From positions 62,001 to 126,000 of the IMG/VR virus record IMGVR_UViG_3300047510_001118: a stretch of DNA of 64,000 nucleotides; one strand, written 5' to 3'. A program made the position numbers and the translations under genes. Positions 40,749-57,492 of this stretch are shown here, piece by piece. A model generated the notes under the pieces. That model ran no database searches, was not told where the DNA came from, and saw nothing but the letters and a program-made list of their open reading frames with translations. The stretch's first letter is position 1. Each line of letters begins with the position of its first letter.

Positions 40749-40750
40749 TG

Positions 40751-41243: not shown

Positions 41244-41244
41244 A

Positions 41245-42825: not shown

Positions 42826-42847
42826 GAGTATTTGAACTATGCCTATC

Positions 42848-43416: not shown

Positions 43417-43456
43417 GTTATACTATAGACTAGTTAATTAATTCAGGAGCGAACTG

Positions 43457-44158
43457 ATGAAACTGTTAAGTACTGCCAACCCAAAGATCCAGAAGGGTAC
43501 GAAACTGGGTTACTTGAGCTTTATCCTACACCTTGCGCCCGCAGATCTCAGTGGTCGTGAGACTTGCCCCAAGCGCACTCAAGGCTGCACCAGTGCATGT
43601 CTTAATACAGCGGGTCGTGGGGGTATGTTTAAACGGGGTGAAACGACTAACATGATCCAACAAGCTCGCATTCGTAAGACAAGGATGTTCTTTGAAGCTC
43701 GCGACGAATTCATGGCTCAACTAGAGAAAGACATTCGTTTAGGTATTAAGCAGGCCTCTAAGTTGGGATTGACACCCGTATTCCGTTTAAATGGTACCAG
43801 CGATCTTGCCTGGGAGAAGTACGGGATCATTGACAAGTTCCCAGGTGTACAGTTCTATGACTATACTAAGGTTTTGGGTCGCAAGGTCAGCCACTTAAAG
43901 AACTATCACTTGACGTTTTCAGCGGCAGATGGCAACGACAGAGATGTCCAAAAGGCCGTAGATCAAGGCATGAATGTGGCTGTGGTGTTCGATCGTTTGC
44001 CCGAAACTTACATGGGCAGGCGTGTGGAAGACGCTGATCAGCACGATCTGCGCTTCTTAGACCCTAAGGGTACAGTGGCAGGACTCAAAGCCAAGGGCCG
44101 TGCTAAGAAGGACACCACCGGATTTGTTCGTAAGACTATTATCTTGGAGGTTGCATAA
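43457..44158 (+). CDS. GP88-like phage protein
   Basis: CPKRTQGCTSACLNTAGRG, FRLNGTSD, FYDYTK, DLRFLDP. Confidence 0.75.
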   Translation: MKLLSTANPKIQKGTKLGYLSFILHLAPADLSGRETCPKRTQGCTSACLNTAGRGGMFKRGETTNMIQQARIRKTRMFFEARDEFMAQLEKDIRLGIKQASKLGLTPVFRLNGTSDLAWEKYGIIDKFPGVQFYDYTKVLGRKVSHLKNYHLTFSAADGNDRDVQKAVDQGMNVAVVFDRLPETYMGRRVEDADQHDLRFLDPKGTVAGLKAKGRAKKDTTGFVRKTIILEVA

Positions 44159-44346
44159 TGGCTCAATATGATCCGCAGGACGATCTACTGTTAGAGGACT
44201 TGGAGTATCGTAAGCAGATGGCCGTGGCCACCCTAAACGATGCCATCAATCAGATCTATAACATAGAGGGCGATCGCTGGCAAATGGCCTATGATACCCT
44301 GGAAGCCGTCATGGGTAATCTCAAGATAGAGGTTGACAACCGGTAG
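44158..44346 (+). CDS. hypothetical early protein
   Basis: GGAGG RBS; ends EVDNR. Confidence 0.6.
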   Translation: MAQYDPQDDLLLEDLEYRKQMAVATLNDAINQIYNIEGDRWQMAYDTLEAVMGNLKIEVDNR

Positions 44347-44391
44347 GGACCGGTGCTATACTATAGGCTAGATAGTTAAAAAGGAGCGAAG

Positions 44392-44655
44392 ATGTTTACA
44401 GTTGAAATCTACAAGAAGGATGCCCGTACTAAAGTGGGTGAGCGCATGGTCCACAAGGCAGATCATAATACCGATAACCTCTCAATGCTAGAGCACTCTG
44501 TGAAGAATACTTGGCGTGCATCACAGGGCTATCGCTACGAGATCCACGAGACCTATGTAACCCGACGGAACTTGATGGGCGGTGCGGAGTTCAAAGAACG
44601 CTATGACACGCCCTACTATTGCTCACCCAGTTCTGAATCTTATTGGAGTATGTGA
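44392..44655 (+). CDS. hypothetical early protein
   Basis: AAGGAGCGAA RBS; ends SPSSESYWSM. Confidence 0.75.
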   Translation: MFTVEIYKKDARTKVGERMVHKADHNTDNLSMLEHSVKNTWRASQGYRYEIHETYVTRRNLMGGAEFKERYDTPYYCSPSSESYWSM

Positions 44656-44656
44656 T

Positions 44657-44854
44657 ATGGCTACTGTAGACGGCGTAAGAGTACAGGTAGGGGACTGGGT
44701 CTCGTTTAAGAGCGACATAGAACAGTCGGGCAAGATCCAAGCAGTACTGTCGGGCAATAGGTTAGTGCTCACTAACCCTAACGGATTCCAGGGTGACTAC
44801 ATTGGTGGCTCGGAGACTACGATAGAACGTGCAGAGGACTGTTGGATCGAATAG
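44657..44854 (+). CDS. hypothetical early protein
   Basis: GGAG RBS before MATVDG. Confidence 0.6.
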   Translation: MATVDGVRVQVGDWVSFKSDIEQSGKIQAVLSGNRLVLTNPNGFQGDYIGGSETTIERAEDCWIE

Positions 44855-44916
44855 TGGTTGACAACCGGTACTGACCGGTTGTATACTGCAGTTATAGTAA
44901 ACAAAAAGGAGCGAAG

Positions 44917-45180
44917 ATGAATATCAGTACACTGCAAGCATTGGTAGAACAAGAGAATCGTTGGGGTAAATTGTTTGGGCGTCGTGAGCTCAGCCTGCTC
45001 CGCGCAGAAGATCGTCAGAAGATCGCTGGGATCATTGACAGCAGACTCAGCCCTGAGAACTTGACCTGCGATGGCGAGTTAAGCCGTGCAGAAGTGAACA
45101 GTCGCTATCGTCAATTGACCCGTGCGGCAGAAGAGTTGTTGAGCATTGACTCTAGTGTGACCTTTTACGAATTTAACTAA
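44917..45180 (+). CDS. hypothetical early protein
   Basis: AAGGAGCGAA RBS; LSPENLTCDGE. Confidence 0.75.
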   Translation: MNISTLQALVEQENRWGKLFGRRELSLLRAEDRQKIAGIIDSRLSPENLTCDGELSRAEVNSRYRQLTRAAEELLSIDSSVTFYEFN

Positions 45181-45190
45181 GGAGATTGAT

Positions 45191-45328
45191 ATGAACACCT
45201 ATCGTATTCAAGTGCGACTCAGTAACGGTATGGTCACTGAGACCGCTGTACAGGCTATTAGCCCTGCGATCGCCCGTGCCATGGTTGAGAGTCAGTATGG
45301 CGCAGGTTCCTTTTTGGGCTACCTTTAA
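45191..45328 (+). CDS. 45-aa early protein
   Basis: hand-translated, AAGGAG RBS. Confidence 0.6.
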   Translation: MNTYRIQVRLSNGMVTETAVQAISPAIARAMVESQYGAGSFLGYL

Positions 45329-45364
45329 TTGACAACCGGTCATGACCGGTAGTAAAGTATAACT

Positions 45365-45655
45365 ATGAAAGCAGTCAAACACACCGACGGAATACGCAGG
45401 ATCACCATGAAGATGGAGGTTGCTGTGGATGTTCGCCACTTGACCCTGTATGCACTGGACATGGTCAAAGGCGAGCAGTTCCCGGTGGACGTGATTTGTT
45501 CTGCTAACAAAAGGGAGATCTTTGCCCTAGCTCGAGCCAATATTCAGTCATTTGGTAAGGACACAGCAATTCAGAACGTGCCGCTGAGTCTAAACCCTGT
45601 AGAGATACAGCGAGCAATGGATCACGTTCGTAGTGTTTTTCCGGAGATTGATTAA
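45365..45655 (+). CDS. hypothetical early protein (leaderless)
   Basis: ATG 7 nt after the -10 box. Confidence 0.6.
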   Translation: MKAVKHTDGIRRITMKMEVAVDVRHLTLYALDMVKGEQFPVDVICSANKREIFALARANIQSFGKDTAIQNVPLSLNPVEIQRAMDHVRSVFPEID

Positions 45656-45960
45656 TGAATTCGATGCTTAGTTTGTATGGTAGACCTGTGGTCATGTTCG
45701 ATGTTAAGAACAAAGAACATCGTAGGATGGCACACCGGTTCTTGGTGGAACGTTCATGGGGTGGGTGCCCGGTGAGATTCGCCCTGCCCATTGGTGAGGG
45801 CAATGTCTACTCTATGGTCATGCGACTGTTGACCCAGTACTATTCTGCCAAAGAGTTTGGCCCTATTCCACAAGAGGACAGCGATCGTTGGCGTGAAGAT
45901 CTTGTGGCAAATACGCCACAGGTTGAATGGCGTAGAGCAACAGAGGTTGACAACCGGTAG
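45655..45960 (+). CDS. hypothetical early protein
   Basis: WGGCPVRF; ends EVDNR. Confidence 0.65.
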   Translation: MNSMLSLYGRPVVMFDVKNKEHRRMAHRFLVERSWGGCPVRFALPIGEGNVYSMVMRLLTQYYSAKEFGPIPQEDSDRWREDLVANTPQVEWRRATEVDNR

Positions 45961-46092
45961 GGACCGGTGCTATACTAATGATACTGTGAAAGTTAAGGGT
46001 GGTTCTGGCAGTCCTAGGTAAAACCTTAATTCAGAGTCAAATCAAGTGCGTGCCAACTCTGAGCCCAACTATTTTTGAAAAGGAGCGAACCT

Positions 46093-46290
46093 ATGTATGA
46101 CATCGTAAAGAACCCAATCCCCCGTAGCGGTCTATTCACTACGCCTACCCTGGAAGAGATCCAACGTCACATCAGCGGTCTACCCAGCGGTGAGCAGGCA
46201 GTGGCCAGCATGGTGTTCATGTTCACGCTGAACGCCTGTAACAAACTCGTAGAAGACGAGATCCTCTCTAAAGATGTATTCGCACAGTAA
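46093..46290 (+). CDS. hypothetical early protein
   Basis: AAGGAGCGAA RBS before MYDIV. Confidence 0.7.
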   Translation: MYDIVKNPIPRSGLFTTPTLEEIQRHISGLPSGEQAVASMVFMFTLNACNKLVEDEILSKDVFAQ

Positions 46291-46300
46291 GGAGCAGACT

Positions 46301-46576
46301 ATGAAGTCAGTACAAGAGATCAACTCAGCAATCATCCAAGGTACCTTTACCAATGACGAGCTCACTAGCATGATTGACGCTGTGAAGTTTGCACGTAGCC
46401 GTCTAAGTAACCAAATCAAATTCCAGGTGCGCAATGGTAGCACAGTGACATTCACTAGCAAACACGGTATGACTTATAGGGGCACTGTGGAGAAGGTGGC
46501 TATCAAATACGCCACAGTCAACACCCAAGTAGGTCGTTACAAGGTTCCTATGAACATGTTAGAGGTTGTTGCGTAA
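46301..46576 (+). CDS. hypothetical early protein (SH3-like C-terminus)
   Basis: AAGGAG RBS. Confidence 0.7.
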   Translation: MKSVQEINSAIIQGTFTNDELTSMIDAVKFARSRLSNQIKFQVRNGSTVTFTSKHGMTYRGTVEKVAIKYATVNTQVGRYKVPMNMLEVVA

Positions 46577-46656
46577 ACGCAACACACCGGTAACTACCGG
46601 TTGACAAGATAGCGGACCGGTAGTATACTATAGGCTAAGTTAACAAGGAGCGAACT

Positions 46657-46926
46657 ATGTTAAACATCAGCAAAATCGTCAAAGTCTACAACGGACGCAT
46701 AGGTTGTATGTGCGGCTGTAACGGAAAATATTCCTATACCGAAGACGGTGCCAGGAACTATGGCCCGGGCTACGACGTCACAGACAGCATCAATGAGCGT
46801 AGTGTGCGCATCATTGCTAAGAAGATCCTCAGCAATCCGAATGTAGAGTTTGAAAACAATTATGCGTTCGTAGAGGATCGCGTTCGTAACAAAATGCAAA
46901 TGGTGGTTTTTAAGGAGCAGGCATGA
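46657..46926 (+). CDS. hypothetical early protein
   Basis: AAGGAGCGAA RBS; GCMCGCNG. Confidence 0.75.
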   Translation: MLNISKIVKVYNGRIGCMCGCNGKYSYTEDGARNYGPGYDVTDSINERSVRIIAKKILSNPNVEFENNYAFVEDRVRNKMQMVVFKEQA

Positions 46927-47273
46927 TTAAATTTAATTGCGTATTAGAGACAGCCGGAAACGGCTACTGGTCGGACGTTGCTAAGTCTGTGAACGTCACT
47001 AAGATCAGCGTACCCTATGTCAACGAAGACGAGGACTTTGGTGAGCTCTGCGTTTACTTTGACAAGCAATGGGACACCCGCAAGGACGGGTTGATCTATA
47101 CGGACAGCCAGTTCCTTACAATGCTGAAAGACCGGCTCACAGAGTGTGGCTTTGATGCCACAGATGTAGACTACTCAGAGCAGGGCATGCAGGGCAACGA
47201 CTACGTGAGCTTAGACGTAGGCGAAAAGTTCCTAAAAAGTTGGTTCAATGTGGTTGACAAAGTTCTGGATTGA
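46923..47273 (+). CDS. hypothetical early protein
   Basis: coupled ORF; YSEQGMQG. Confidence 0.75.
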   Translation: MIKFNCVLETAGNGYWSDVAKSVNVTKISVPYVNEDEDFGELCVYFDKQWDTRKDGLIYTDSQFLTMLKDRLTECGFDATDVDYSEQGMQGNDYVSLDVGEKFLKSWFNVVDKVLD

Positions 47274-47315
47274 GCTTATACTATTAAAACAGTAACAAAT
47301 TAAGGAGCGAAACTT

Positions 47316-47795
47316 ATGGCAACTCGAAGCAGAATTGGCGTCATGCACGGAGATGTGGTCAAACACGTTTACTGTCACTGGGACGGTTATTTGAGCAATA
47401 ATGGTCAAATCCTACAAGAACACTACGATTCAACAAAGGCCAACAACTTGGTCGCGCTGGGTGACATTAGCAGTCTGCGCCCCGACATTGGTGAGAAGCA
47501 CGACTTTAGCCGTTTGGACAGCCCCCTGTCTGAAGACGAGTACGAAAAGCTCTACGGCAACATGACCACGTTCTACGGACGTGATCGCGGCGAAGAGAAC
47601 ACAGGTTGGAAGGTCAGCCACTCGTTTGAGGACTTCTTGGATCACGCTGCCGGATGCGGTGCTGAATGGTACTACATTCTCAGAGACGGTGTTTGGTATT
47701 GTGGCAACTTGTACAGCAGTGATTCACGCCACTACAAGAACTTGGTAGTACTGCGTGACAGCATTGAGTTGGAGTTGGCAGAGGAGGCAGCATGA
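47316..47795 (+). CDS. conserved phage early protein
   Basis: MATRSRIG...VYCHWDGY. Confidence 0.8.
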   Translation: MATRSRIGVMHGDVVKHVYCHWDGYLSNNGQILQEHYDSTKANNLVALGDISSLRPDIGEKHDFSRLDSPLSEDEYEKLYGNMTTFYGRDRGEENTGWKVSHSFEDFLDHAAGCGAEWYYILRDGVWYCGNLYSSDSRHYKNLVVLRDSIELELAEEAA

Positions 47796-48004
47796 AAGTT
47801 ATCGTAGAGACTGTGCTGACCCAAGAGCTTGAGGTTCCTGACAACTGGGATAGGTACGATGTGTTTGACTTCCTAGCAGAGAATCAATCCTTCCGTACAG
47901 CGTTCCAGGGTGTGAGCAACACGGACCAAACAGCCCGCATCATTGACGTGGGTGTGGTAACTGAAACAGTAACCGAAATGGGCGAGGAGGCCTTTGATGA
48001 GTAA
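47792..48004 (+). CDS. hypothetical early protein
   Basis: GGAGG RBS. Confidence 0.65.
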   Translation: MKVIVETVLTQELEVPDNWDRYDVFDFLAENQSFRTAFQGVSNTDQTARIIDVGVVTETVTEMGEEAFDE

Positions 48005-48179
48005 AATGGCAGAATTGGATATGTATGCTTACGATATTGAGCAACTGTATATCGATGGCTTGACTGAAAAGAACATTGCCAAGACCCTGGACATCCCCGT
48101 AGAGTACGTCTACGCTTGGATGGAGATGAATGGTGTGTGCGACGAAGAGTTCAGCCCTAACGCAACTATTAACTCCTAA
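47994..48179 (+). CDS. small HTH-like protein
   Basis: DGLTEKNIAKTLDIPVEYV. Confidence 0.55.
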   Translation: MMSKMAELDMYAYDIEQLYIDGLTEKNIAKTLDIPVEYVYAWMEMNGVCDEEFSPNATINS

Positions 48180-48190
48180 GGCCCCGCTAT

Positions 48191-48418
48191 ATGCAGATCA
48201 CAATTCAGAACCTTAGCCCTGTTGAAATCGAAATTGCGGATGCGCTTTGGGCCTGCGAGGATTTGAATGAGGTCAGAGACTACGTTCTCAGACTGCCAAA
48301 ATCATTGAGAGATCGGGCTCATGCTCTTTATCATACAATGATCTACGAAGTTATTGATCAGGAAATGGATGTTAACGATCTAGAAATGGCGAATCAAGTC
48401 ATTGACAAATATCGTTAA
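48191..48418 (+). CDS. hypothetical early protein
   Basis: 75-aa ORF. Confidence 0.6.
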   Translation: MQITIQNLSPVEIEIADALWACEDLNEVRDYVLRLPKSLRDRAHALYHTMIYEVIDQEMDVNDLEMANQVIDKYR

Positions 48419-48476
48419 TCTGCTATAATAATAAGACGATGCGGAACAGCATCTCTTTAACTACAGAGGAATTAAA

Positions 48477-48752
48477 ATGAAATACACTTTTTCTAAAGAA
48501 AGCAAGACTTTTAAAGTTTTCAACGCTCTTTATCAGGGCGAGCGTTTGACACAGAGCCAAGCCGTTAAACGTTTCGGCGTTAAGAATTTGGCTGCTGAAG
48601 CAAGCCGTATCCGTCAAAACGGTTACGCTGTCTACGCAAAGAGCCGTACTGCTGGTAATGGTGTTACCGTTACTGAGTACGAAATGGGTAATCCAAGTCG
48701 TGAGATCGTTGCTTTAGGTTACAAAGCCAAAGCAATGGGCATCACTATCTAA
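48477..48752 (+). CDS. winged-HTH DNA-binding protein
   Basis: LTQSQAVKRFGVKNLAAEASRIRQNGYAV followed by a beta-hairpin wing; own promoter; strong codon bias. Confidence 0.7.
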   Translation: MKYTFSKESKTFKVFNALYQGERLTQSQAVKRFGVKNLAAEASRIRQNGYAVYAKSRTAGNGVTVTEYEMGNPSREIVALGYKAKAMGITI

Positions 48753-48758
48753 GAATAA

Positions 48759-48895
48759 ACTCGCCGCGATGGCGATGTGAAGTCCTAGGATTCGCTCCCC
48801 TAGGCAACGGCTGAACCGATTCGCTCCCGGGTAGGCCACCGGAAGGGTACTGTAAAAGGTACCCTTCCACCTTATGTGGGTATTCAAAATACCAG
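48759..48895. ncRNA. structured intergenic RNA carrying two hairpins with identical ATTCGCTCC loops
   Basis: hairpins at 48762-48776, 48784-48804, 48809-48837 and 48841-48868 (10-bp perfect stem). Confidence 0.6.
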
Positions 48896-48954
48896 TTGAC
48901 AGTTTGGAGGATCGGCGCTATACTATGCACATAGTAAGAAGTTAGGAGCGAAAG

Positions 48955-49239
48955 ATGGAAAAAGGAACTTGCCCAGTCTGTAATGGATCAACCCGTGTGC
49001 CCGCTGGGGATAACAAATATAAATCAGTTATCGCTGGCTACGACCAGGCTACTGATACTTTTGGTTGTACCAACTGCGGGGGTCAGTATATGTACGGTCG
49101 CCCAACAGGTGAAGTTCGCTTGAACAAGGCGGGAGAGCCCTGCACTCACAAATATTCTTCTAAGACAGTGGGACGGTGCTTGACGGAATACACCTGCGAG
49201 CATTGTGGGGATCGATTCCAGATTGACAGCGGTGACTGA
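48955..49239 (+). CDS. zinc-ribbon early protein
   Basis: CPVC, CTNC, CEHC; AGGAGCGAA RBS. Confidence 0.75.
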   Translation: MEKGTCPVCNGSTRVPAGDNKYKSVIAGYDQATDTFGCTNCGGQYMYGRPTGEVRLNKAGEPCTHKYSSKTVGRCLTEYTCEHCGDRFQIDSGD

Positions 49240-49281
49240 TTGTGCTATACTATAGGTATAGTGAATGATAAGGAGCGAAAA

Positions 49282-49533
49282 ATGTTGACACTAGATAAAA
49301 TCCGTAAAATTGAATTCCGTGGCGAAGAGTTTGAACAGTTCCACGGCAGTCCGTTTGATCGCGGTGCAGCAGATAGTTATTACGGGAGACCTCAGGACCC
49401 GCATTGGTTTCCTGAAGGCACTTACAAGGGACGCCGCATTGACAGCCCTGACATGACTATGAAAGAACTTCGTGCTTACTTCGCAGGCTACGAATACAAC
49501 GAACAGCATGGCGACAAGAAGGACTGGGGTTAA
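49282..49533 (+). CDS. conserved phage early protein
   Basis: HGSPFDRGAADSYYGR; AAGGAGCGAA RBS. Confidence 0.75.
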   Translation: MLTLDKIRKIEFRGEEFEQFHGSPFDRGAADSYYGRPQDPHWFPEGTYKGRRIDSPDMTMKELRAYFAGYEYNEQHGDKKDWG

Positions 49534-49625
49534 TGGCTGACCTTGTAACCTATGTCCTACTTCGCATCATCCAGGTGGCGATACTGGTGTTTGCGATAGC
49601 AGTTTTTATCAACGGTTTTTTCTAA
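49533..49625 (+). CDS. 30-aa hydrophobic peptide
   Basis: hand-translated, coupled ORF. Confidence 0.45.
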   Translation: MADLVTYVLLRIIQVAILVFAIAVFINGFF

Positions 49626-49634
49626 GGAGCGAAT

Positions 49635-50258
49635 ATGCCTAATTGGTGCAATAACAGAGTGGTGATCAGCCACGAAGACTCAAGCAAGATGGAAGCCTTG
49701 GTAGAGGCTATCAAAGATGGTAAGTTCTGTAATCATGTGATTCCTGTGCCCGAAAGTCTACATATCGTAGCAGGCTCTGTAGGTGACCCTGATGAGCAGA
49801 AGAAGCTCGAAGAGGACACAGCCCGTAACCTAGAAGTCCACGGCTATGGCAACTGGTATGACTTCTGTGTGAATCGCTGGGGAACCAAGTGGGATGTAGA
49901 CCCTTACGATCCTACAGATGTTAAGGTTGAGAACAACACCATTGAGTTTGGTTTTGATTCAGCCTGGGCACCACCCGTGGGAGTCTACGATGAACTAGTG
50001 AATCAGGGCTTCGAAGTAGAGGCAACTTACTACGAGCCAGGCATGGCCTTTGTGGGTCGTTGGCATAATGGCTATGATGACTGCGTTGAGTTCGGCGGTG
50101 AGACCTCTGCGACTGTGCGTGATGTCATCGGAGAAGAGCTAGATGATGAGTATGGTATCTCAGAGACCATGGCTGAATACGAAGAGATGGACAAGGACGA
50201 AACTACCCAGTGGTATGAAGAGGGTGTGGAATCCAAAGGTTTAGAGCCACACAAATAA
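49635..50258 (+). CDS. YubB/DUF1281-like ferredoxin-domain protein
   Basis: MPNWCNN, WYDFC...WGTKWD, FDSAWAPP, YYEPG. Confidence 0.8.
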   Translation: MPNWCNNRVVISHEDSSKMEALVEAIKDGKFCNHVIPVPESLHIVAGSVGDPDEQKKLEEDTARNLEVHGYGNWYDFCVNRWGTKWDVDPYDPTDVKVENNTIEFGFDSAWAPPVGVYDELVNQGFEVEATYYEPGMAFVGRWHNGYDDCVEFGGETSATVRDVIGEELDDEYGISETMAEYEEMDKDETTQWYEEGVESKGLEPHK

Positions 50259-50412
50259 CAGCCACTAGGCCCTGCAACACGCCTGGGCACTTCGCTGGTG
50301 TGGCTTTTTTACAACAGGAATACCCTACTTAACCGTAGGGTTTTTCTGCTTTTTGGTTGACGGTTTGGGTGGCCCCTGCTATACTATAGAAACTGTAACA
50401 AAGGAGCGAGCA

Positions 50413-50565
50413 ATGCTGACACTGAAAGACGCTAAGAAACTGTGTGGGATGGATCCGCGCACTACGGCACGTTGGTATGCGCAGGGCTACTATATGAAGG
50501 CTGACGGACGCTGGTACATTACTGTAGGCGGTGTAGAGTATGTGAAATACTACACCGGAAACTAG
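50413..50565 (+). CDS. small early protein
   Basis: AAGGAGCGAG RBS before MLTLKD. Confidence 0.65.
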   Translation: MLTLKDAKKLCGMDPRTTARWYAQGYYMKADGRWYITVGGVEYVKYYTGN

Positions 50566-50610
50566 GGTTTTTGGTTGACAACCGGTAGTGACCGGTGCTA
50601 TAATATGAAC

Positions 50611-50829
50611 ATGAACTTAGAAACTATCGCCAAACACACAGCCCTGTTCTTTACCCTAGTAGGGGCCCTATTCACAGCACTAGCCTGGGATCCCATGAAC
50701 ATCCTGTTCTTGAACTTGGGCAGTCTGCTGTATCTCTTTTGGGCCTACAGGGTTAGGGATTGGAATCTCGTAGCAGTCAATGCAGGACTGTTGACAATCT
50801 ATGTGATTGGCGCTATAATTAGACTATGA
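50611..50829 (+). CDS. small multi-TM protein (PnuC-like segment)
   Basis: three hydrophobic helices; leaderless start. Confidence 0.55.
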   Translation: MNLETIAKHTALFFTLVGALFTALAWDPMNILFLNLGSLLYLFWAYRVRDWNLVAVNAGLLTIYVIGAIIRL

Positions 50830-50972
50830 TGAAACTTCAAGTAAAGATTCCCCAAAAGACTCGTGCACATCGTGTGCTTTGGGACAGAGACTTGCCTTTT
50901 CGTCCAAAAACGGAACAGAGCAAGACACAGTATCGCCGCAAGGCTAAACATCCTAACAAGGAGATTGCATAA
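50826..50972 (+). CDS. 48-aa basic protein
   Basis: hand-translated; RAHRVLWDRDLPFRPK...YRRKAKH. Confidence 0.6.
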   Translation: MMKLQVKIPQKTRAHRVLWDRDLPFRPKTEQSKTQYRRKAKHPNKEIA

Positions 50973-51154
50973 TGAAAGAAGGCTTCATGTTTGTCACTGG
51001 ACTCTTGCTGACGCTGGGCGGAGTGGGTGGAATTGAGAACTCTATGACGGACAGCGAACTGCTCTCATCGCTTGCTGTTGCTGTTGTGGGCTTGGGAATC
51101 TTTGGTTGTTCTGCTCTGATGATTCAGCAGAAAGAATTGGACAACCAAATCTAA
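50972..51154 (+). CDS. two-TM small protein
   Basis: AAGGAG RBS. Confidence 0.65.
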   Translation: MKEGFMFVTGLLLTLGGVGGIENSMTDSELLSSLAVAVVGLGIFGCSALMIQQKELDNQI

Positions 51155-51249
51155 AATATTGGTTGACACCCAATCCAAACGGTGTTACAATATGGATACA
51201 GTGAAAGGTTCACTGTTAACTTTAGGCAACTATAGAAAGGCAACTTAAA

Positions 51250-51618
51250 ATGGCAACTAGTAAACTGTACAACGTGGTAGGTATCTCTACCCTCAATGGC
51301 GACGCCAAAGTTCGCTTCGCAAATGATGTGATGCGCATCAAAGTGTTGGCTAAGAATGGTCACACTGACATCAATCTTGTAGAGCTTCCCTCTGCGATGT
51401 TGAAAACTGATGCAGCTCGCTTCTTGAGCAATCTCCCTGAGTTCCAAACTGCTGTGGCCAAGGCTGCTGTAGCAGAGTACCTTGACAAGAACGATCGTGC
51501 TCCTAAGGCACGTGTCGAAGTCAAGACTGCGGTGAAGAAAGCCGTTGAGACCAAGCCCGCAAAGGCCAAGGCTCCACGTGTGACTACTCCTGCTGAGGAC
51601 GAAGACGCACCCTTCTAA
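51250..51618 (+). CDS. hypothetical early protein with Ala/Lys-rich tail
   Basis: own promoter at 51163. Confidence 0.7.
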   Translation: MATSKLYNVVGISTLNGDAKVRFANDVMRIKVLAKNGHTDINLVELPSAMLKTDAARFLSNLPEFQTAVAKAAVAEYLDKNDRAPKARVEVKTAVKKAVETKPAKAKAPRVTTPAEDEDAPF

Positions 51619-51689
51619 GGTAGGGATCAAAAGCGGTTGACAACAGCCGCTTTTGGTGCTATACTTTAACAAATAGTAAGGAGCGTGAG

Positions 51690-51824
51690 ATGGAACTTAT
51701 TCTAGCATTCGTAGCAGGACTCATCGTAATGGATCTTCTCTGGGCTTGGCGCATGGGCATTCCCCAAATGCTTTGGGCTCGTTGGAAGTATCGTAAATCT
51801 CTCAAAGATCAGGAGCAATCATGA
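51690..51824 (+). CDS. 44-aa membrane peptide
   Basis: AAGGAGCGTG RBS. Confidence 0.55.
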   Translation: MELILAFVAGLIVMDLLWAWRMGIPQMLWARWKYRKSLKDQEQS

Positions 51825-51949
51825 CCAGTCATATCATAGCATTCATCGCAGGTGTCGTAGTGGCCACAGTAGGTTTCACAGGCGTGGCTCAGATCGCAGA
51901 CTCAGGCATCCAGAAGGTTCAGGCAATATCAAAAGAAGCGGCTAAGTAA
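51821..51949 (+). CDS. 42-aa membrane peptide
   Basis: AGGAG RBS, ATGA coupling. Confidence 0.55.
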   Translation: MTSHIIAFIAGVVVATVGFTGVAQIADSGIQKVQAISKEAAK

Positions 51950-51956
51950 TCAACCT

Positions 51957-52034
51957 GGGCCTCTAGCTCATGTTGGTTAGAGCAGTGGACTCATAATCCA
52001 TTGGTGCGGAGTTCGACTCTCCGGGGGCCCACCA
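51957..52034 (+). tRNA. tRNA CAT anticodon, probably Ile2 (lysidine, reads AUA)
   Basis: cloverleaf with GTGGA-CTCATAA-TCCAT arm, GTTCG T-loop, encoded CCA; resembles ileX rather than Met tRNAs. Confidence 0.9.
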
Positions 52035-52038
52035 GATC

Positions 52039-52123
52039 GCGACTGTGGTGAAATCGGTAGACACAAGAGACTTAAAATCTCTCGCTGCAAGGCGTGCCAG
52101 TTCGATTCTGGCCAGTCGCACCA
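52039..52123 (+). tRNA. tRNA-Leu(TAA)
   Basis: AGAGA-CTTAAAA-TCTCT arm, long variable arm, CCA. Confidence 0.93.
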
Positions 52124-52129
52124 AACAAT

Positions 52130-52206
52130 CTGCCCGTAGCTCAACCGGATAGAGCAACGGCCTTCTAAGCCGTAGGTTGGGGGTTCGATTCCCTCCGGGC
52201 AGGCCA
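52130..52206 (+). tRNA. tRNA-Arg(TCT)
   Basis: ACGGC-CTTCTAA-GCCGT arm, CTGCCCG/CGGGCAG acceptor stem, CCA. Confidence 0.93.
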
Positions 52207-52291
52207 GTGTTGCGAAAAAACAACACATTTTTTGGTTGACAATTTGGCTGACCCCTGCTATACTATTGATACTGTGATAACGAAGGAGCGA

Positions 52292-52633
52292 ATGATGATA
52301 CTAGTAATCGACACACAATACATGGAAAACTACGGTGCCCACGATTGGGACGGCAAGGGCGAGTGCCCCCAGTACTGGAAGATGAAGGGCGGCAGTTCCT
52401 ACAAGATCACCGGCATTCCTTCCGGTGTAGACTTCCAGGCAGTCATCGAACAGGTGACCCCAGAGATCGAGCGTAGCAACGACTACTGCCGTGAATACAT
52501 CATCGGCACCCACAGTGAAGCAGATGACTACCTCTCTGAGTTTGAGAAGAGCCAACTGGACTACGAGGGTGAGATCCAGTTTCCGGAACCCACAATCCAG
52601 TACGGGTCTTTGGTTGACAAAGTCGCGGCTTGA
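52292..52633 (+). CDS. conserved phage early protein
   Basis: TQYMENYGAHDWDGKGECPQYWKMKGG. Confidence 0.75.
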   Translation: MMILVIDTQYMENYGAHDWDGKGECPQYWKMKGGSSYKITGIPSGVDFQAVIEQVTPEIERSNDYCREYIIGTHSEADDYLSEFEKSQLDYEGEIQFPEPTIQYGSLVDKVAA

Positions 52634-52671
52634 TCGTATACTATTAAAACTGTAACTAAGGAGCGAACCAA

Positions 52672-53004
52672 ATGACAGACATCAAAACTATCGTAGATCA
52701 AGCAGTGGCCCTGGCTCAGGACGCTAGCCAGCAGTACTTCCAAAACACACTGAAAGGCCAGGATCAATTCGCCTGCGGCTTTGCCTGGGTTGATGTATAC
52801 GTAGAGCGTACCAATTCAAAAGAAGCCAAAGAGCTAATCGCTGCAGGCTTTAAGAAAGACTACAAGCCCAAGTGCTTGAGCATGTGGAACCCAGGCGGTA
52901 TCAACGTACAGAACATTGACACCAAAGAAGCGGGTGCTGATGCTATGGCTCGTTATCTACAGGCCCAGGGCTTCAAAGCCTACGCAGGCAGTCGATTAGA
53001 CTAA
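52672..53004 (+). CDS. conserved phage early protein
   Basis: ACGFAWV...QNIDTKEAGA. Confidence 0.75.
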   Translation: MTDIKTIVDQAVALAQDASQQYFQNTLKGQDQFACGFAWVDVYVERTNSKEAKELIAAGFKKDYKPKCLSMWNPGGINVQNIDTKEAGADAMARYLQAQGFKAYAGSRLD

Positions 53005-53064
53005 GTATTGACAGCCCCCAGGGGGCTGTAGTATAATTACATTTTTAACAGAGAAAGAGCGAAC

Positions 53065-53916
53065 ATGACTAATTTGGCAACTAAACCCGCAGGCTATCGT
53101 GTACTGAGTCTTGAGCAAGAAAGTCCTGCTCAAACACGTGAAACAGACGCAGAGATCATTGAACGCTTGCGTGAGCGTTTTGACATCCTTGATGACATGA
53201 CTCGTGCTGTAAAGAAAGGCGCTGTACGTGCAATGATCGTCAGTGGTGCTCCAGGCGTAGGTAAGAGCTTTGGTGTTGAGAAAGTTCTGGGCAAGCATGA
53301 TCTAATGGCCAATATCGCCAACGATGAAAAGCTCAAGAAGTACGAGATCGTCAAGGGTGCGATGTCAGCAATTGGCTTGTACTCAAAGCTCTATGAGTTC
53401 TCAGCAGAGAAGAACATCCTAGTGTTCGACGACTGTGACTCAGTACTGTTAGATGATCTTAGCCTTAACATTCTAAAGGCTGCTCTAGATACAAGTAAGA
53501 AGCGTACCATCCATTGGAACACTGACAGCAGACTGTTACGCAGTGAAGGTGTGCCCAATTCGTTTGAGTTCAAGGGTGGTGCTATCTTTATTACCAATAT
53601 CAACTTTCAGAACATCAAGAGCAAGAAGTTACAGGATCACTTGGCAGCTCTGGAAAGCCGTTGCCACTACATTGATCTAACCATACACACAGAGCGTGAG
53701 AAGATGTTGCGCATCAAACAGATCGTAGGCGATGGCATGCTCAACGAGTATGAGTTCTCAGAAGAGCAGACAGCAGAGCTTATTGGGTTTATTGACCTTA
53801 ACAAGAAGCGTCTACGCGAGCTGAGCCTGCGTACAGTACTAAAGACTGCAGACCTTATGCGCAGTTTCCCTGGGGACAAATGGCAGCGTGTAGCACAGAT
53901 CAGCCTAATGAAGTAA
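53065..53916 (+). CDS. P-loop AAA-like ATPase
   Basis: Walker A GAPGVGKS, Walker B LVFDDCD, FITN. Confidence 0.85.
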   Translation: MTNLATKPAGYRVLSLEQESPAQTRETDAEIIERLRERFDILDDMTRAVKKGAVRAMIVSGAPGVGKSFGVEKVLGKHDLMANIANDEKLKKYEIVKGAMSAIGLYSKLYEFSAEKNILVFDDCDSVLLDDLSLNILKAALDTSKKRTIHWNTDSRLLRSEGVPNSFEFKGGAIFITNINFQNIKSKKLQDHLAALESRCHYIDLTIHTEREKMLRIKQIVGDGMLNEYEFSEEQTAELIGFIDLNKKRLRELSLRTVLKTADLMRSFPGDKWQRVAQISLMK

Positions 53917-53917
53917 C

Positions 53918-53934
53918 GCTAGTTCGCTCCTAGC
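53918..53934. other. hairpin displaying TTCGCTC(C), antisense to the early RBS
   Basis: GCTAG-TTCGCTC-CTAGC. Confidence 0.6.
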
Positions 53935-53937
53935 CTT

Positions 53938-53965
53938 AGAGGATCCTTCGGGGTCCTCTTTTTTT
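53938..53965 (+). terminator. intrinsic terminator ending the early array
   Basis: AGAGGATCC-TTCG-GGGTCCTCT followed by a T-run. Confidence 0.9.
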
Positions 53966-54176
53966 ATCAAAAATTTTTTCGTCGAGGAGGTTAGAAAAAA
54001 TCTTTTCGAAAAAAAATTCGGTGAGGGGTAGTAAAATAAAACTGTTGTAAAAAAACAACATAGTGGTAACAAATCACCAGGCCACCGAAAAAATACCCTA
54101 TACTTTAATTTTTTACGGTGCAGTTTTTTAAAACCAGAGTGGACCCATTCGGGCCAAGTTCCTCGCTATATACTGT

Positions 54177-54398
54177 ATGATCAGATTCCCCCAAGAAACT
54201 ATCCAAAAGATTGTTCAAACACTCGCAGCCATAACAGCCACAGGTTTTATTACCTTTACAGTAACGCACCTACATGCGCCATTGATATCCTGGCTGTTAT
54301 GGTTTACACATTGGATTGTTGCCATCCCCATAGCCTTAGGCACTGTGTTTTGGCTAGCACCCCTATACAGTCGGTGGCTTAAAAAACTGGTTGGATAA
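54177..54398 (+). CDS. two-TM small protein (DUF2798-like)
   Basis: hydrophobic 73-aa ORF. Confidence 0.55.
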   Translation: MIRFPQETIQKIVQTLAAITATGFITFTVTHLHAPLISWLLWFTHWIVAIPIALGTVFWLAPLYSRWLKKLVG

Positions 54399-54469
54399 GT
54401 ATATAAGTACTCCGCAAATTTTTTTTGCGGGCTATTTTTTAAAACCGGGCAGGACCCATTGGAGCAACT

Positions 54470-54748
54470 GTGGCAAAACGTAAATCTGCAACTGTAGACA
54501 TAGAAACAAACCTCCCCAACGACGACTTTTCAAAACTCACTGAAGACCAAACTCTGGATCTATTAGAACTAACGTTCACAGCACTGTGTCAACGCTTAGA
54601 GCAAGGTGGAGTAGACCCAGAACTGATCACTGGCACACTGTTTGGCATATTTGCTGATCGTATGGCTGAGCTAGGAGATCGTGAATCATTTGACTGTATG
54701 TTAGCCGAAGCCATCGAAACACCATGGCAGGACTATACTCTACACTAA
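54470..54748 (+). CDS. hypothetical protein
   Basis: GGAG RBS, GTG start. Confidence 0.65.
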   Translation: MAKRKSATVDIETNLPNDDFSKLTEDQTLDLLELTFTALCQRLEQGGVDPELITGTLFGIFADRMAELGDRESFDCMLAEAIETPWQDYTLH

Positions 54749-54869
54749 CGAGTTTCTGTACAGTCTTTTAATGATATTCACTATGTACTTTATGGTCATT
54801 TAGTCATATAATACTGATACATACTAATGCAATACCTAGTATGTTTTATCAACACAAAGGAGTATTATT

Positions 54870-54941
54870 ATGTGGACCAAACCAACTGCAACTGAAATGC
54901 GTTACGGTTTTGAAGTAACCATGTACATCATGAACAGATAA
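54870..54941 (+). CDS. pqqA: PQQ precursor peptide
   Basis: hand translation MWTKPTATEMRYGFEVTMYIMNR with the conserved E-x3-Y; AAGGAG RBS. Confidence 0.92.
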   Translation: MWTKPTATEMRYGFEVTMYIMNR

Positions 54942-54965
54942 TCTCTGTCACTGTGTATAAGGAAC

Positions 54966-54989
54966 AGCCCACATAATAGTGGGCTTTTT
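54966..54989 (+). terminator. intrinsic terminator after pqqA
   Basis: AGCCCAC-ATAATA-GTGGGCT-TTTT. Confidence 0.8.
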
Positions 54990-55042
54990 CTTGGCTAAAA
55001 ATTTGTTTTTGACCGCTACGCGGCTTCGCCGCTACGTGACTC

Positions 55043-56482
55043 TCAGACAGGATCACCTGTGCCAATATTACTGAGGAATTGGCGCAGTTTAGTTGAATCT
55101 GCCTGTGCCCGTATTTTGGGCAAGGGTGCGCCCTGTGTGGGATCAGTGACTTCTCCAGTTTCTGGATCTGTTGCCGTATTACTGGTGCGTTTGATCTGAT
55201 CTAATATAGCAGTACTCTTGGGTCTATAGTCTGTGTCGCCTTCTATGCCCGGATCTGTGATACGCAGTGTGTCAATGTCAAAGTCTAGATCAATCTTCAT
55301 GCCCACACCACTTGATGAGCGTGTCTTCATCAACTGTATCTGATACTTGCCACGCTCACGCATAGCACGGCTGGTAAAGATACCTATGACGTTGTCTGCT
55401 GTTTGAATTTTACTGAGTCCGCCTGAAATGTGGCTGTGATCAAACTCTACTTCTTCTACAGCCGCACGGTTTAACTGGCTGGCAGTGACAAACACACACT
55501 GTTTTTCCATGGCTAGATTTCTGAGTTCTTCACTGACAAACTTGTCCTTGACAAACAGATCTGCGGGGCTGATCTTTTTGTTTATGGGCATCATTAGATC
55601 TAGGTAGTCCACTAATAACACGTCTACTTTACGATCTGTTTTGATTTCATACTCTTTTAAGTAAGCACGTATGTCATTGGCGTTCTTGCCTGAAGCCATG
55701 TATTTGACTTGGAATGCGCCCGATTTCTTGCCAATCATCTTGACCTTCATTTCCACGCCGTCTAAATCTTTGAAAATGTCCTTGGTTGATATGCCCGTGG
55801 TCATTGAATCTACACGCATACTTACCAGTGCTTCACTGAGCTCAAAGGTCAAGTACATGACGTTCAAGCCCGCCAGGGCCCAATTAACGCCCAAGTTGGC
55901 CAAGAATAGACTTTTACCTGCGCCCGAACCGCCAGCAAAGATATTCAACTCTCCGCGATTCATTCCGCCAAATAGGCGTTTGTCCACAGTTTCCCAACCA
56001 GTCTTTACCTGTCCGTTTTTGTCTTTTAGGCCTAGTAGTCTGCCCTTGGGATCACGCCAGTAGTCTGTGCCCAGATCTTTTTGAAGTCCTATCTGTACGG
56101 CCTGTTTGATCATGTCTTCCACAGGACCATAGTTGCCTTCTTCCAGCATGTCTGCGGCTTTGAGTATGGCACGTTCTAGACCCTTGTGTCGGGTAAATGT
56201 TTCAAACTCTGTGAGCAGCCAATCATAGTGCTCGTCTTTGAGCTGTCCTGGATCTTTGAGTTCTGTTTTGGTTGCGGCCACCACCATGTCAAATGTGGGC
56301 AGAGCATTGTGTTCTGACACATAGTTGTTGATGAATTCCGCTGAGTCCTGTAGTCTGCGATCAAATAGAGTGTGATCAAAAATGCTTTGGCAGCGCACAA
56401 AAGTGGCGGCATCACTGAGCATCATTTCCAAATACAGTTTCTGTATGTCATGTCCGTAGTCTGTGTTTTGTCTTGTTGTCAT
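55043..56482 (-). CDS. replicative DnaB/gp41-like helicase
   Basis: GGSGAGKS, VDYLD, TASQLNR, LMKTR. Confidence 0.93.
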   Translation of the reverse strand: MTTRQNTDYGHDIQKLYLEMMLSDAATFVRCQSIFDHTLFDRRLQDSAEFINNYVSEHNALPTFDMVVAATKTELKDPGQLKDEHYDWLLTEFETFTRHKGLERAILKAADMLEEGNYGPVEDMIKQAVQIGLQKDLGTDYWRDPKGRLLGLKDKNGQVKTGWETVDKRLFGGMNRGELNIFAGGSGAGKSLFLANLGVNWALAGLNVMYLTFELSEALVSMRVDSMTTGISTKDIFKDLDGVEMKVKMIGKKSGAFQVKYMASGKNANDIRAYLKEYEIKTDRKVDVLLVDYLDLMMPINKKISPADLFVKDKFVSEELRNLAMEKQCVFVTASQLNRAAVEEVEFDHSHISGGLSKIQTADNVIGIFTSRAMRERGKYQIQLMKTRSSSGVGMKIDLDFDIDTLRITDPGIEGDTDYRPKSTAILDQIKRTSNTATDPETGEVTDPTQGAPLPKIRAQADSTKLRQFLSNIGTGDPV

Positions 56483-56490
56483 ATACTATA

Positions 56491-57483
56491 TTATATCTCC
56501 GAGAACCAACGTTTTGCCATTAATTTGACTTTTAATTCTGACTGCTCCCTGTGCTGATAGATCTGCTCCAAACACCAAATCTTACCATAGCGTTGAACAG
56601 CATCATGTGCGTCTTTGCAGCCTGGAAACTCAGGCAGGCTCACTGACCAACCCAATTCCAGTGCTCGTGACACTGTGCGACTGCCATCTGTGTCACGATC
56701 TGGAACCAGTATGATTTCACGATCCAATCTATTGATCAGCATGGCCTGTTTTTCCATGACGTCTGCGCCCAATATGGCCACACCGTCAATGCTGAGTGCG
56801 TCCATGGGTCCTTCAACCACTACCACAAACTGTCTGTCACCCTGCTGATCTAAATTGAACACATAGCCTGGCTTTTGATCTGAAATGTACTTGGGCTTGC
56901 CCTCTACGACCTTGCGGGCAGTATTGCCCACTATGTTGCCTTGATAACGGAATGGTATGATCACACGATCTTGATAGCCATTTAAGGGTGTCCAATAGAA
57001 GTCATCCATGGGGTCAAAGCCTCGACTGTACACATAGTCTATGACCTGATTGAACCACTCTGCCAAATCCGGGGGCAGTTGATCTAAACTGATCAACCAC
57101 TGCCTGATTGGCAAACTGCCCTGGGGCAATTCACGCTGTTCAAACGTGGGCAGAGTCACAGCGGCCAGGGCCTGCTCATCTGCTTCTATTTTCATGGCTT
57201 CAAGGCTGAGTTTGGTTATGGCATCGTCTGGTGCGCCCATCCACTGCAGCAGTTGACGCATCTTACGTGGCAAATGACGCCCTGCTACATAACTGGCTTT
57301 GTATCCACAGTTAAAGCAGTGATAACTACAGCCGTCACTGTTGCGTATAATACCGCCACGCTGACGTGTGTCTAGGGTAGTGCCGTTATGATGGCAGCAC
57401 ACAGCGTTGAACTTGGTCCAACCGCTGGGTGTCTGTTTCCGTTTTGCGGGAAGGTACGTATAGATCGCATCGACGATACTCAT
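56491..57483 (-). CDS. DNA primase (gp61-like)
   Basis: N-terminal CCHH...HCFNC Zn finger; TOPRIM VEGPMDAL, DRDTDG. Confidence 0.9.
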   Translation of the reverse strand: MSIVDAIYTYLPAKRKQTPSGWTKFNAVCCHHNGTTLDTRQRGGIIRNSDGCSYHCFNCGYKASYVAGRHLPRKMRQLLQWMGAPDDAITKLSLEAMKIEADEQALAAVTLPTFEQRELPQGSLPIRQWLISLDQLPPDLAEWFNQVIDYVYSRGFDPMDDFYWTPLNGYQDRVIIPFRYQGNIVGNTARKVVEGKPKYISDQKPGYVFNLDQQGDRQFVVVVEGPMDALSIDGVAILGADVMEKQAMLINRLDREIILVPDRDTDGSRTVSRALELGWSVSLPEFPGCKDAHDAVQRYGKIWCLEQIYQHREQSELKVKLMAKRWFSEI

Positions 57484-57492
57484 ACATACATT

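What the first reader, a model, noticed from the sequence alone, without database searches (positions are those of the whole stretch)
53918..53965. Third anti-RBS hairpin at the very end of the early array, just before the terminator
Seen: GCTAG-TTCGCTC-CTAGC. The 11-mer AGTTCGCTCCT (53921-53931) is the exact reverse complement of the AGGAGCGAACT leaders at 43445 and 46646, and sits in the 3' UTR of the last (ATPase) gene. Inference: a 3'-UTR-derived sRNA or feedback element that accumulates with early transcription. Its independent stem sequence argues for selection on the loop.
Basis: partly seen in the sequence, partly recalled or inferred. Interest (0 to 1): 0.7.

Follow-up and report, generated by a model that had tools for sequence, protein, structure and literature searches.

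The report
Anti-ribosome-site hairpin ending phage early genes
A small RNA hairpin after the last early gene of an uncultured freshwater jumbo phage shows a loop that matches, in antisense, the unusual ribosome-binding site of the phage's early genes; dozens of related phages keep the same loop, so it is probably a built-in regulator of early protein synthesis.

Summary
The hairpin GCTAG-TTCGCTC-CTAGC lies at 53918-53934, two bases after the stop codon of ORF 53065-53916 and three bases before a strong intrinsic terminator (53938-53966). Its 11-mer is the exact reverse complement of the leaders at 43445 and 46646.

It is not chance. GGAGCGAA is an extended Shine-Dalgarno site specific to the early genes: 13 of the 23 GGAG-type sites in the early array carry it, against 3 of 72 elsewhere. 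The complementary loop (A)UUCGCUCC(C) recurs in sense orientation twice more (48790, 48819). It is invariant downstream of the orthologous gene in relatives down to about 64% protein identity, while the stems covary. An independent 15-mer scan found 88 more hairpin contexts, mostly next to or inside terminators. Of 82 hairpin contexts scored for neighbours, 65 lie on the same strand as GGAGCGAA genes, which are about three times denser upstream of the element. Rfam has no matching family, and no cultured phage carries the motif.

Best explanation (about 0.45): an anti-SD loop on the 3' ends of early transcripts pairs with early ribosome-binding sites and damps their translation. The sRNA and feedback parts are untested, because no RNA data exist.

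It is a new variant of a known kind (icaR 3'UTR, UCCC-loop sRNAs).

The parts
53918..53934 (+). Anti-RBS hairpin: stem GCTAG/CTAGC, 7-nt loop UUCGCUC (53923-53929). The conserved 8-mer TTCGCTCC is 53923-53930.
   Evidence: -5.0 kcal/mol. The CM R1 hit in the own genome has E 7e-4 and ranks second. Orthologous hairpins with other stems occur in L007, L045, L013 and L101.
53921..53931 (-). 11-mer AGGAGCGAACT read on the minus strand: the exact copy of the leaders at 43445 and 46646.
   Evidence: No start codon follows it on the minus strand, so it is not a minus-strand RBS.
53938..53966 (+). Intrinsic terminator: 9-bp stem, C(UUCG)G tetraloop, T7 tail.
53065..53916 (+). Last early gene, NrdC.10-like putative ATPase (283 aa). 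Its own initiation region AGAGCGAAC (53052-53060) carries the 7-nt complement of the loop.
43446..52667 (+). Early array. It has 11 exact GGAGCGAA sites 1-4 nt before ATG (43446, 44383, 44908, 46082, 46647, 47304, 48945, 49272, 49626, 52285, 52660) plus near-variants, behind about 20 near-consensus TTGACA-17/18-TATACT promoters.
48753..48880 (+). Tandem anti-RBS element in the 3' UTR of the wHTH gene 48477-48752. H1 48761-75; H2 48784-48804 (CCTAGG stem, loop AUUCGCUCC); H3 48809-48837 (inner CCG/CGG 48816-30, same loop); H4 48841-48868.
   Evidence: 27 pairs, 10 covarying, conserved in three other phage contigs with a 29-30 nt spacing of the two loops.

Best explanation
The hairpin is one copy of a conserved RNA element of this phage clade. 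It is a short stem that presents the loop (A)UUCGCUCC(C) at the 3' end of early transcripts, immediately before or inside the intrinsic terminator. The loop is an anti-Shine-Dalgarno sequence matched to the clade's own extended early ribosome-binding site GGAGCGAA. It pairs with that site, in trans as nuclease-resistant 3' terminal fragments that outlast the mRNA bodies and possibly also in cis on the same transcript. The pairing occludes the SD and spacer, and so lowers translation (and perhaps the stability) of the early mRNAs as early transcripts accumulate.

Shown: the structure, its conservation, the complementarity, the co-occurrence and co-orientation with GGAGCGAA genes, loop accessibility and duplex energy.

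Inferred: that pairing happens in the cell, its sign (repression), and that 3' fragments accumulate.
For: 1. Complementarity goes beyond a generic SD. The early sites are GGAGCGAA in 13 of the 23 GGAG-type sites in the early array, against 3 of 72 elsewhere in the 278-kb genome. The loop complements all 8 nt. The window copy complements 11-12 nt of two leaders.
2. Conservation. The motif is invariant downstream of the orthologous gene in relatives from 94% down to about 64% identity, and always on the gene's strand. Of 193 occurrences, 138 are true RBSs and 55 are sense-strand non-RBS copies.
3. Stems covary. The covariation score is 0.448 against 0.167 for shuffles (0 of 500 as high), with compensatory changes in three pairs. 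G.U pairs make up 124 of 770 outer-stem pairs, which only fits the sense-strand RNA.
4. The motif is unpaired with P above 0.85 in most copies. Opening costs are 0-0.6 kcal/mol. The 8-bp duplex is -12.4 kcal/mol against -6.2 for AAGGAG with the 16S tail. The 15-mer scores -14 to -21 kcal/mol against 13 early initiation regions.
5. In the independent 15-mer scan, 88 of 110 contexts are hairpins. Of the 82 hairpin contexts scored for neighbours, 65 have same-strand GGAGCGAA genes. RBS density is 0.42/kb upstream against 0.15/kb downstream.
6. Clades without the extended RBS (leaderless early genes) lack the loop.
7. In the own genome the three best CM hits are the three sense copies, all inside the early array.
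8. Many RBS copies themselves sit in loops of 4-7 bp hairpins: 54 of 111 against 29 expected. This allows loop-loop kissing.
9. There is experimental precedent for 3' UTR and terminator-loop anti-SD motifs (PMC3868564, PMC4132741, PMC2790875).
Against: There are no expression, 3'-end or interaction data (none listed), and the phage is uncultured. Loop and RBS are both invariant, so no compensatory change between them could be found. Bases around the loop that RBS pairing does not need are also conserved: the CCG/CGG stem, the flanking A and C, and a 5' UAARU internal loop. This hints at an additional or different partner. Regulator and targets are made from the same early transcripts, so a timer needs differential stability, which is assumed. 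The window copy has a weak stem (-5 kcal/mol), and in a longer context it competes with pairing to the end of the coding region.
Confidence: 0.45

Rival explanations
1. The hairpin is a protein-binding (or other ligand-binding) site linked to termination, antitermination, 3'-end processing or mRNA stability. A phage or host protein reads the loop and the CCG/CGG stem. The complementarity to the RBS is secondary.
For: Conserved loop plus covarying stem is the classic signature of a protein-bound hairpin. Extra conserved positions (CCG/CGG, flanking A/C, 5' UAARU bulge) are not explained by RBS pairing. The element is constantly associated with terminators.
Against: It does not explain why the 8-9 nt loop is the exact complement of a clade-specific RBS extension. 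It also does not explain why loop and RBS type appear and disappear together. No candidate protein was identified; the early-array ORFs are almost all without family hits.
Confidence: 0.2
2. The same pairing occurs but with a positive or structural role. The 3'-5' contact protects the initiation region from a RegB-like or RNase E cleavage, or closes the mRNA into a loop. Terminating ribosomes, which melt a hairpin placed 2 nt after the stop codon, then gate the contact.
For: First copies lie 0-25 nt after the stop codon. In some relatives the stop codon is part of the stem. The ATPase's own initiation region keeps GAGCGA(A) in near relatives.
Against: Pairing covers the SD itself, which normally blocks 30S binding. 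Most copies sit in terminators far from the stop codon.
Confidence: 0.1
3. The hairpin is a tRNA T-arm mimic, recognised by tRNA enzymes (TruB, TrmA, RNase P/Z) as a processing or modification signal.
For: The window copy has a 5-bp stem, a 7-nt loop UUCGCUC and a closing G-C pair. It is one substitution from the T-loops UUCGAUC of this phage's own tRNAs.
Against: The position equivalent to A58 is C. Most family members have an A.C closing pair and a 9-nt loop. ARAGORN and Rfam report no tRNA or tRNA-like hit here. The consensus GUUCNANNC is cited from my own knowledge.
Confidence: 0.05
4. It is a DNA-level site (a protein-binding site used in both orientations, or a hairpin promoter for a phage RNA polymerase driving antisense transcription).
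For: The same 8-15-mer occurs in both orientations. A few contigs have the full 15-mer in RBS orientation.
Against: Orientation is strictly tied to role: before ATG, or in sense-strand hairpins at 3' ends. Stems contain 16% G.U pairs, which would be A.C mismatches on the other strand. The distance to ATG, not to the promoter, is constrained.
Confidence: 0.04
5. It is chance, or a neutral relic of an inverted RBS.
For: An 8-mer is expected about 4 times per strand in 278 kb. The window stem is short.
Against: The loop is conserved and the stems covary across dozens of diverged contigs.
Confidence: 0.01

Closest known systems
icaR mRNA 3' UTR anti-SD motif (UCCCCUG) of Staphylococcus aureus (PMC3868564)
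   Same: A pyrimidine-rich anti-SD motif in the 3' UTR of an mRNA, complementary to an SD. There it blocks initiation and creates an RNase III site.
   Different: icaR is one gene in a bacterium with a long 3' UTR, acting mainly on its own 5' UTR. Here a phage has a multi-copy loop in short hairpins at terminators, matched to an extended SD shared by a whole early-gene array, and conserved across many phages. Nothing has been tested experimentally.
UCCC-loop sRNAs of Firmicutes: RNAIII 3' hairpins, RsaE/Rsa family, LhrC (PMC2790875, PMC4132741)
   Same: C-rich motifs displayed in hairpin loops, including the terminator loop, often in two or three copies, which pair with the SD of several targets.
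   Different: Those are free-standing bacterial sRNA genes with generic SD complementarity. Here the element is a 3' UTR element of phage early operons with 8-9 nt complementarity to a phage-specific SD plus spacer. There is no sequence relation.
c4 antisense RNA of phages P1/P7 (Rfam C4 family; own knowledge)
   Same: A phage RNA made from the same operon as its target, whose loops pair with an RBS region to block translation.
   Different: c4 controls one antirepressor operon. It is a defined processed RNA of about 77 nt. No Rfam match was found here.
T4 RegA/RegB shut-off of early translation (own knowledge)
   Same: It acts on the SD region of early mRNAs as a class, and early genes are marked by a GGAG-type site.
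   Different: RegA and RegB are proteins. Here the candidate effector is an RNA loop.
Kissing-loop antisense control (ColE1 RNA I/RNA II, R1 CopA/CopT; own knowledge)
   Same: Complementary 7-9 nt loops on short stems. Here many RBS copies also sit in loops.
   Different: Those pairs are transcribed from opposite strands of one locus. Here the two partners are at separate loci.

Membership tests
Anti-SD regulatory RNA elements (icaR-type 3' UTR motif, UCCC-loop sRNAs) | Pyrimidine-rich motif complementary to an SD, exposed as single strand or in a loop | tested here: met
   The loop UUCGCUC(C) is unpaired in the MFE and the ensemble.
Anti-SD regulatory RNA elements (icaR-type 3' UTR motif, UCCC-loop sRNAs) | Complementary SD present in mRNAs of the same organism | tested here: met
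   There are 11 exact GGAGCGAA sites in the early array plus variants, and 11-12 nt matches at 43445 and 46646.
Anti-SD regulatory RNA elements (icaR-type 3' UTR motif, UCCC-loop sRNAs) | Located in a 3' UTR or at the terminator of a transcript | tested here: met
   It lies 2 nt after the stop codon and 3 nt before the terminator. Relatives carry it in or next to terminators.
Anti-SD regulatory RNA elements (icaR-type 3' UTR motif, UCCC-loop sRNAs) | Demonstrated pairing with repression of initiation or RNase III cleavage | not testable with these tools
   No RNA runs were listed.
Intrinsic terminator | GC-rich hairpin directly followed by a U tract | tested here: met
   This is met for 53938-53966. 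The anti-RBS hairpin 53918-34 itself has no U tract, so in this window it is a separate upstream hairpin. In many relatives the motif is the apex of the terminator.
tRNA T-arm / tRNA-like element | 5-bp stem closed by G53-C61, 7-nt loop UUCRANY with A58 | tested here: not met
   Stem and loop sizes fit in the window copy, but position 58 is C. In addition, 17 of 22 family members have an A.C closing pair. There is no tRNA or tRNA-like hit.
C4 antisense RNA and every other Rfam 15 family | Covariance-model match | tested here: not met
   cmscan at E up to 5 over 40000-58000 found only the three tRNAs and noise, and nothing at 48.8 kb or 53.9 kb.
Lambda-type nut/boxB antitermination site | Promoter-proximal boxA plus a hairpin with a GNRA-like pentaloop bound by N | tested here: not met
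   The element is 3'-terminal, the loop is 7-9 nt, and in relatives it is the terminator apex itself. No N-like protein was sought.

The most novel reading that the evidence does not exclude
A clade of uncultured freshwater jumbo phages runs a private SD/anti-SD code. Early genes are tagged by the extended site GGAGCGAA. Stable terminator fragments carrying one or two AUUCGCUCC loops act as an RNA-only timer that switches off the whole early class, an RNA counterpart of T4 RegA/RegB. The loop is frozen because it must match dozens of targets.
Probability: 0.3. Interest if true: 0.8.

Novelty: new variant of a known kind. Interest (0 to 1): 0.66.

Why it matters
Temporal control of phage early genes is known mainly through proteins (RegA, RegB, repressors, antiterminators). 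Phage-encoded trans-acting RNAs that regulate the phage's own gene classes are rare. Here a compact, easily testable pair (an 8-nt loop and an 8-nt extended SD) is conserved in well over a hundred metagenomic phage contigs and is absent from Rfam and from cultured phages. If the pairing is real, three things follow. It shows how a virus can mark a gene class at the translation level and shut it off with by-products of its own transcription. It gives an annotation rule for early-gene arrays in uncultured phages. It offers an orthogonal SD/anti-SD pair for synthetic biology.

Tried and rejected
- Minus-strand RBS: rejected. No start codon follows the motif on the minus strand in the window or in relatives.
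- Cis sequestration of a downstream RBS on read-through transcripts (T4 gene e/soc type): this fits the tandem copies at 48.8 kb, which lie before the RBS at 48945. It does not fit this copy, which is followed by a strong terminator and no GGAGCGAA gene.
- Compensatory loop/RBS evolution. One-mismatch and two-mismatch loop searches in all loci and a scan with a free 9-nt loop in conserved flanks found no variant loop in a hairpin context. Distant relatives are leaderless. The test is uninformative.
- RNA evidence: none was listed.
- Cultured relatives: megablast found none. The best protein identity is 46% (PA5oct group). The motif is absent from the phage collection at blastn sensitivity.
- Whole-fragment duplexfold against all start regions. 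Early genes score better (median -19.3 against -14.6, p 2e-7), but the method lets terminator bases pair, so I rely instead.
- A literature search for the motif strings returned only primers.
- The 15-mer scan includes about 15 chance hits in GC-rich coding DNA, as expected for the size of the collection.

Full report
**What is in the sequence.**
The window is bases 62001-126000 of a 278,126-bp IMG/VR phage record from freshwater metagenomes. After the TAA stop (53914-16) of ORF 53065-53916 comes one C. Then come GCTAG (53918-22), TTCGCTC (53923-29) and CTAGC (53930-34), then CTT. A 9-bp hairpin with a C(UUCG)G loop and seven T follows (53938-53966).
- The small hairpin folds at -5.0 kcal/mol.
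- The 50-nt unit folds at -19.8 kcal/mol (z -4.06).
- AGTTCGCTCCT (53921-31) is the exact reverse complement of AGGAGCGAACT at 43445 and 46646.
- With one mismatch allowed there are six sites, against 0.63 expected.
- The ORF is an NrdC.10-like protein (phrog_1250). Its best cultured relatives are the PA5oct group at 46% identity. The AAA_16 hit is below threshold.

**The motif it complements is a class-specific ribosome-binding site.**
From about 42.5 to 53.0 kb the + strand carries some 20 near-consensus TTGACA-17/18-TATACT promoters in front of small ORFs.
- Eleven of these genes have exactly GGAGCGAA 1-4 nt before ATG. Several more have one or two changes, including the ATPase itself (AGAGCGAAC).
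- Genome-wide, 16 of 95 GGAG-type sites are GGAGCGAA, and 13 of the 16 lie in this 20-kb array.
- In relatives the base before GGAG varies (A, T, C) while GGAGCGAA does not. So the conserved unit is the SD plus a fixed spacer, CGAA.

**The loop recurs and is conserved.**
In the own genome, sense-strand copies that are not an RBS of the other strand and that sit in hairpin loops are at 48790-98 (stem CCTAGG), 48819-27 (stem CCG/CGG) and 53923-30. A covariance model built from 22 distinct hairpins ranks these three first in the whole genome (E 5e-5, 7e-4, 3e-3). The remaining hits are the antisense of real RBSs.

The gene has 62 related loci in IMG/VR. In all lineages down to about 64% protein identity that use GGAGCGAA, TTCGCTCC lies downstream of the gene on its strand. 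Of 193 occurrences, 138 are RBSs and 55 are sense-strand non-RBS copies.

In the nearest relatives the orthologous hairpin has other stems: AAGG/CCTT, AGAGG/CCTCT, CUGG/CCGG and CUGG/CCAG. On the 22-sequence alignment three stem pairs show compensatory changes. The covariation score is 0.448, against 0.167 for shuffles (0 of 500 as high), and it also beats all slid controls.

**Architecture of the family.**
Folding of 28 instances puts the motif in a loop, with mean unpaired probability above 0.85 in most. Three layouts occur:
- a small hairpin immediately 5' of a terminator (this window, L007, L045, L101, and the L018-L043 group);
- the module CCG-AUUCGCUCC-CGG at the apex of a long terminator hairpin whose outer stem covaries, often with a 5' UAARU internal loop (L005, L009-L016);
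- two such loops in tandem.

The tandem element at 48753-48880 is a four-hairpin structure conserved in three other phage contigs. It has 27 pairs, 10 of them covarying, and the loop spacing is kept at 29-30 nt.

The 110 unique contexts divide as follows:
- 88 have an outer stem of at least 5 bp;
- 7 are RBSs of the other strand;
- 15 are mostly chance hits in GC-rich DNA.

Outer stems contain 16% G.U pairs, so the structure is selected on the sense RNA. Of the 82 hairpin contexts scored for neighbours, 65 have same-strand GGAGCGAA genes in the fetched flank and 14 have opposite-strand ones. These RBSs are about three times denser upstream than downstream. The element therefore typically closes arrays of GGAGCGAA genes, as in the window.

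Lineages without the extended RBS start their early genes 6-7 nt after a TATAAT box, that is, leaderless, and they lack the loop.

**Energetics.**
- The loop:RBS 8-mer duplex is -12.4 kcal/mol. AAGGAG with the canonical 16S tail gives -6.2.
- The cost of opening the loop is 0-0.6 kcal/mol. For this copy it is 0.01 for the 7-nt loop and 2.95 if the eighth base, which is in the stem, is included.
- The 15 nt around this loop pair with the 13 early initiation regions at -14 to -21 kcal/mol.
- The RBS motif itself lies in the loop of a 4-7 bp hairpin, with the start codon in the 3' arm, in 54 of 111 distinct instances against 29 expected from re-paired flanks. The stems vary (CATAG/CTATG, ATAAG/CTTAT, CATTG/CAATG). 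Loop-loop kissing is therefore possible. This enrichment is inflated by shared ancestry and is only suggestive.

**Interpretation.**
I see only two ways to explain an 8-9 nt loop that is the exact complement of a clade-specific RBS extension and that appears and disappears with it: RNA-RNA pairing, or one double-stranded DNA site used in both orientations. The DNA reading is disfavoured for three reasons:
- the strict link between orientation and position;
- the strand-specific G.U pairs;
- the constraint on distance to ATG rather than to the promoter.

I therefore favour an anti-SD element at the 3' end of early transcripts that occludes early initiation sites. It would act most plausibly as stable hairpin-terminator fragments in trans, and possibly also in cis (confidence about 0.45).

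The total invariance of the loop fits a regulator with dozens of targets. This includes a scan that left the 9 loop bases free, in which 10 of 26 hits were canonical hairpins and 16 were unrelated DNA.

Three points count against certainty:
- no RNA data exist;
- no loop/RBS covariation is available;
- conserved bases outside the complementary stretch (CCG/CGG, UAARU) suggest that a protein or another partner also reads the hairpin (rival at 0.2).

A T-arm mimic is unlikely. The window copy is one substitution from the phage's own T-loops, but the A58 position is C, most copies have an A.C closing pair, and no tRNA-like model matches.

**Comparison with known systems.**
Functionally the closest are the icaR 3' UTR anti-SD motif (PMC3868564), the UCCC-loop sRNAs whose terminator loops carry the seed (PMC2790875, PMC4132741) and, among phages, the P1/P7 c4 RNA (own knowledge). 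None is related in sequence. Rfam 15 has no match and no cultured phage carries the motif. I class it as a new variant of a known kind: an anti-SD RNA element that is phage-borne, multi-copy, terminator-associated and matched to an extended SD marking a temporal gene class.

The coordinates, the hairpin, the 11-mer identity, the 3' UTR position and the argument for selection on the loop are confirmed, and the comparative data strengthen them considerably. The sRNA and feedback mechanism remains an inference.

Noticed in passing
window 42848-46601 and 50581-50595: The operator-like 15-mer ACCGGTAGTGACCGG occurs 16 times with at most 3 mismatches, against 0.75 expected. It lies beside the -35 box or inside the spacer of the early promoters (for example 44339-53 within promoter 44333-62). 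It is also seen at promoters in relatives (L097, L099). It is a candidate repressor site; a wHTH gene lies at 48477-48752.
   Followed up: partly
window 48753-48880: A four-hairpin, roughly 130-nt conserved non-coding element carries two anti-RBS loops 29 nt apart, after the wHTH gene and before promoter 48896. It has 10 covarying pairs in four phages. It is the strongest sRNA candidate of the system.
   Followed up: yes
window 53960-54170: An AT-rich non-coding stretch after the terminator is conserved in the nearest relatives. It has T/A runs around TTTTCGAAAA, G-rich boxes (GAGGAGG, GAGGGG), two hairpins (CTGTTG..CAACAG, TGGTG..CACCA) and a conserved AAAATACCCTATA block. It could be a promoter region for another transcription class or an origin.
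   Followed up: partly
window early array, e.g. 46641-46662, 47300-47315; many loci: The RBS GGAGCGAA is often itself the loop of a short hairpin whose 3' arm contains the start codon: 54 of 111 instances against 29 expected.
   Followed up: partly
window 51957-52206: Three tRNA genes (Met-CAT, Leu-TAA, Arg-TCT) sit inside the early array, followed by a terminator-like hairpin at 52207-52226.
   Followed up: no
loci L046-L064 (distant relatives of the ATPase): Early genes there begin 6-7 nt after a TATAAT box, so they look leaderless. They have neither the extended RBS nor the anti-RBS loop.
   Followed up: partly
G000:C1:31046-31079 (outside the window); loci L127, L129, L130, L141, L150, L151: Some leaders carry two RBS-type motifs in tandem, or the full 15-mer CCGGGAGCGAATCGG in RBS orientation just before ATG. 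This is a hairpin that is the exact complement of the anti-RBS hairpin.
   Followed up: no
window 43457-44158: The first gene of the array belongs to Pfam GP88 (PF17338, E 1.6e-40). Almost all other early ORFs have no family.
   Followed up: no
motif GGAGCGAAC (early RBSs of the window, e.g. 43446, 46647, 52660): From memory, the same 9-mer occurs in 16S rRNA helix 24 of many Gram-positive bacteria (GGGGAGCGAACAGG). An 8-9-mer match to rRNA is not unlikely by chance, the host is unknown, and this was not checked.
   Followed up: no
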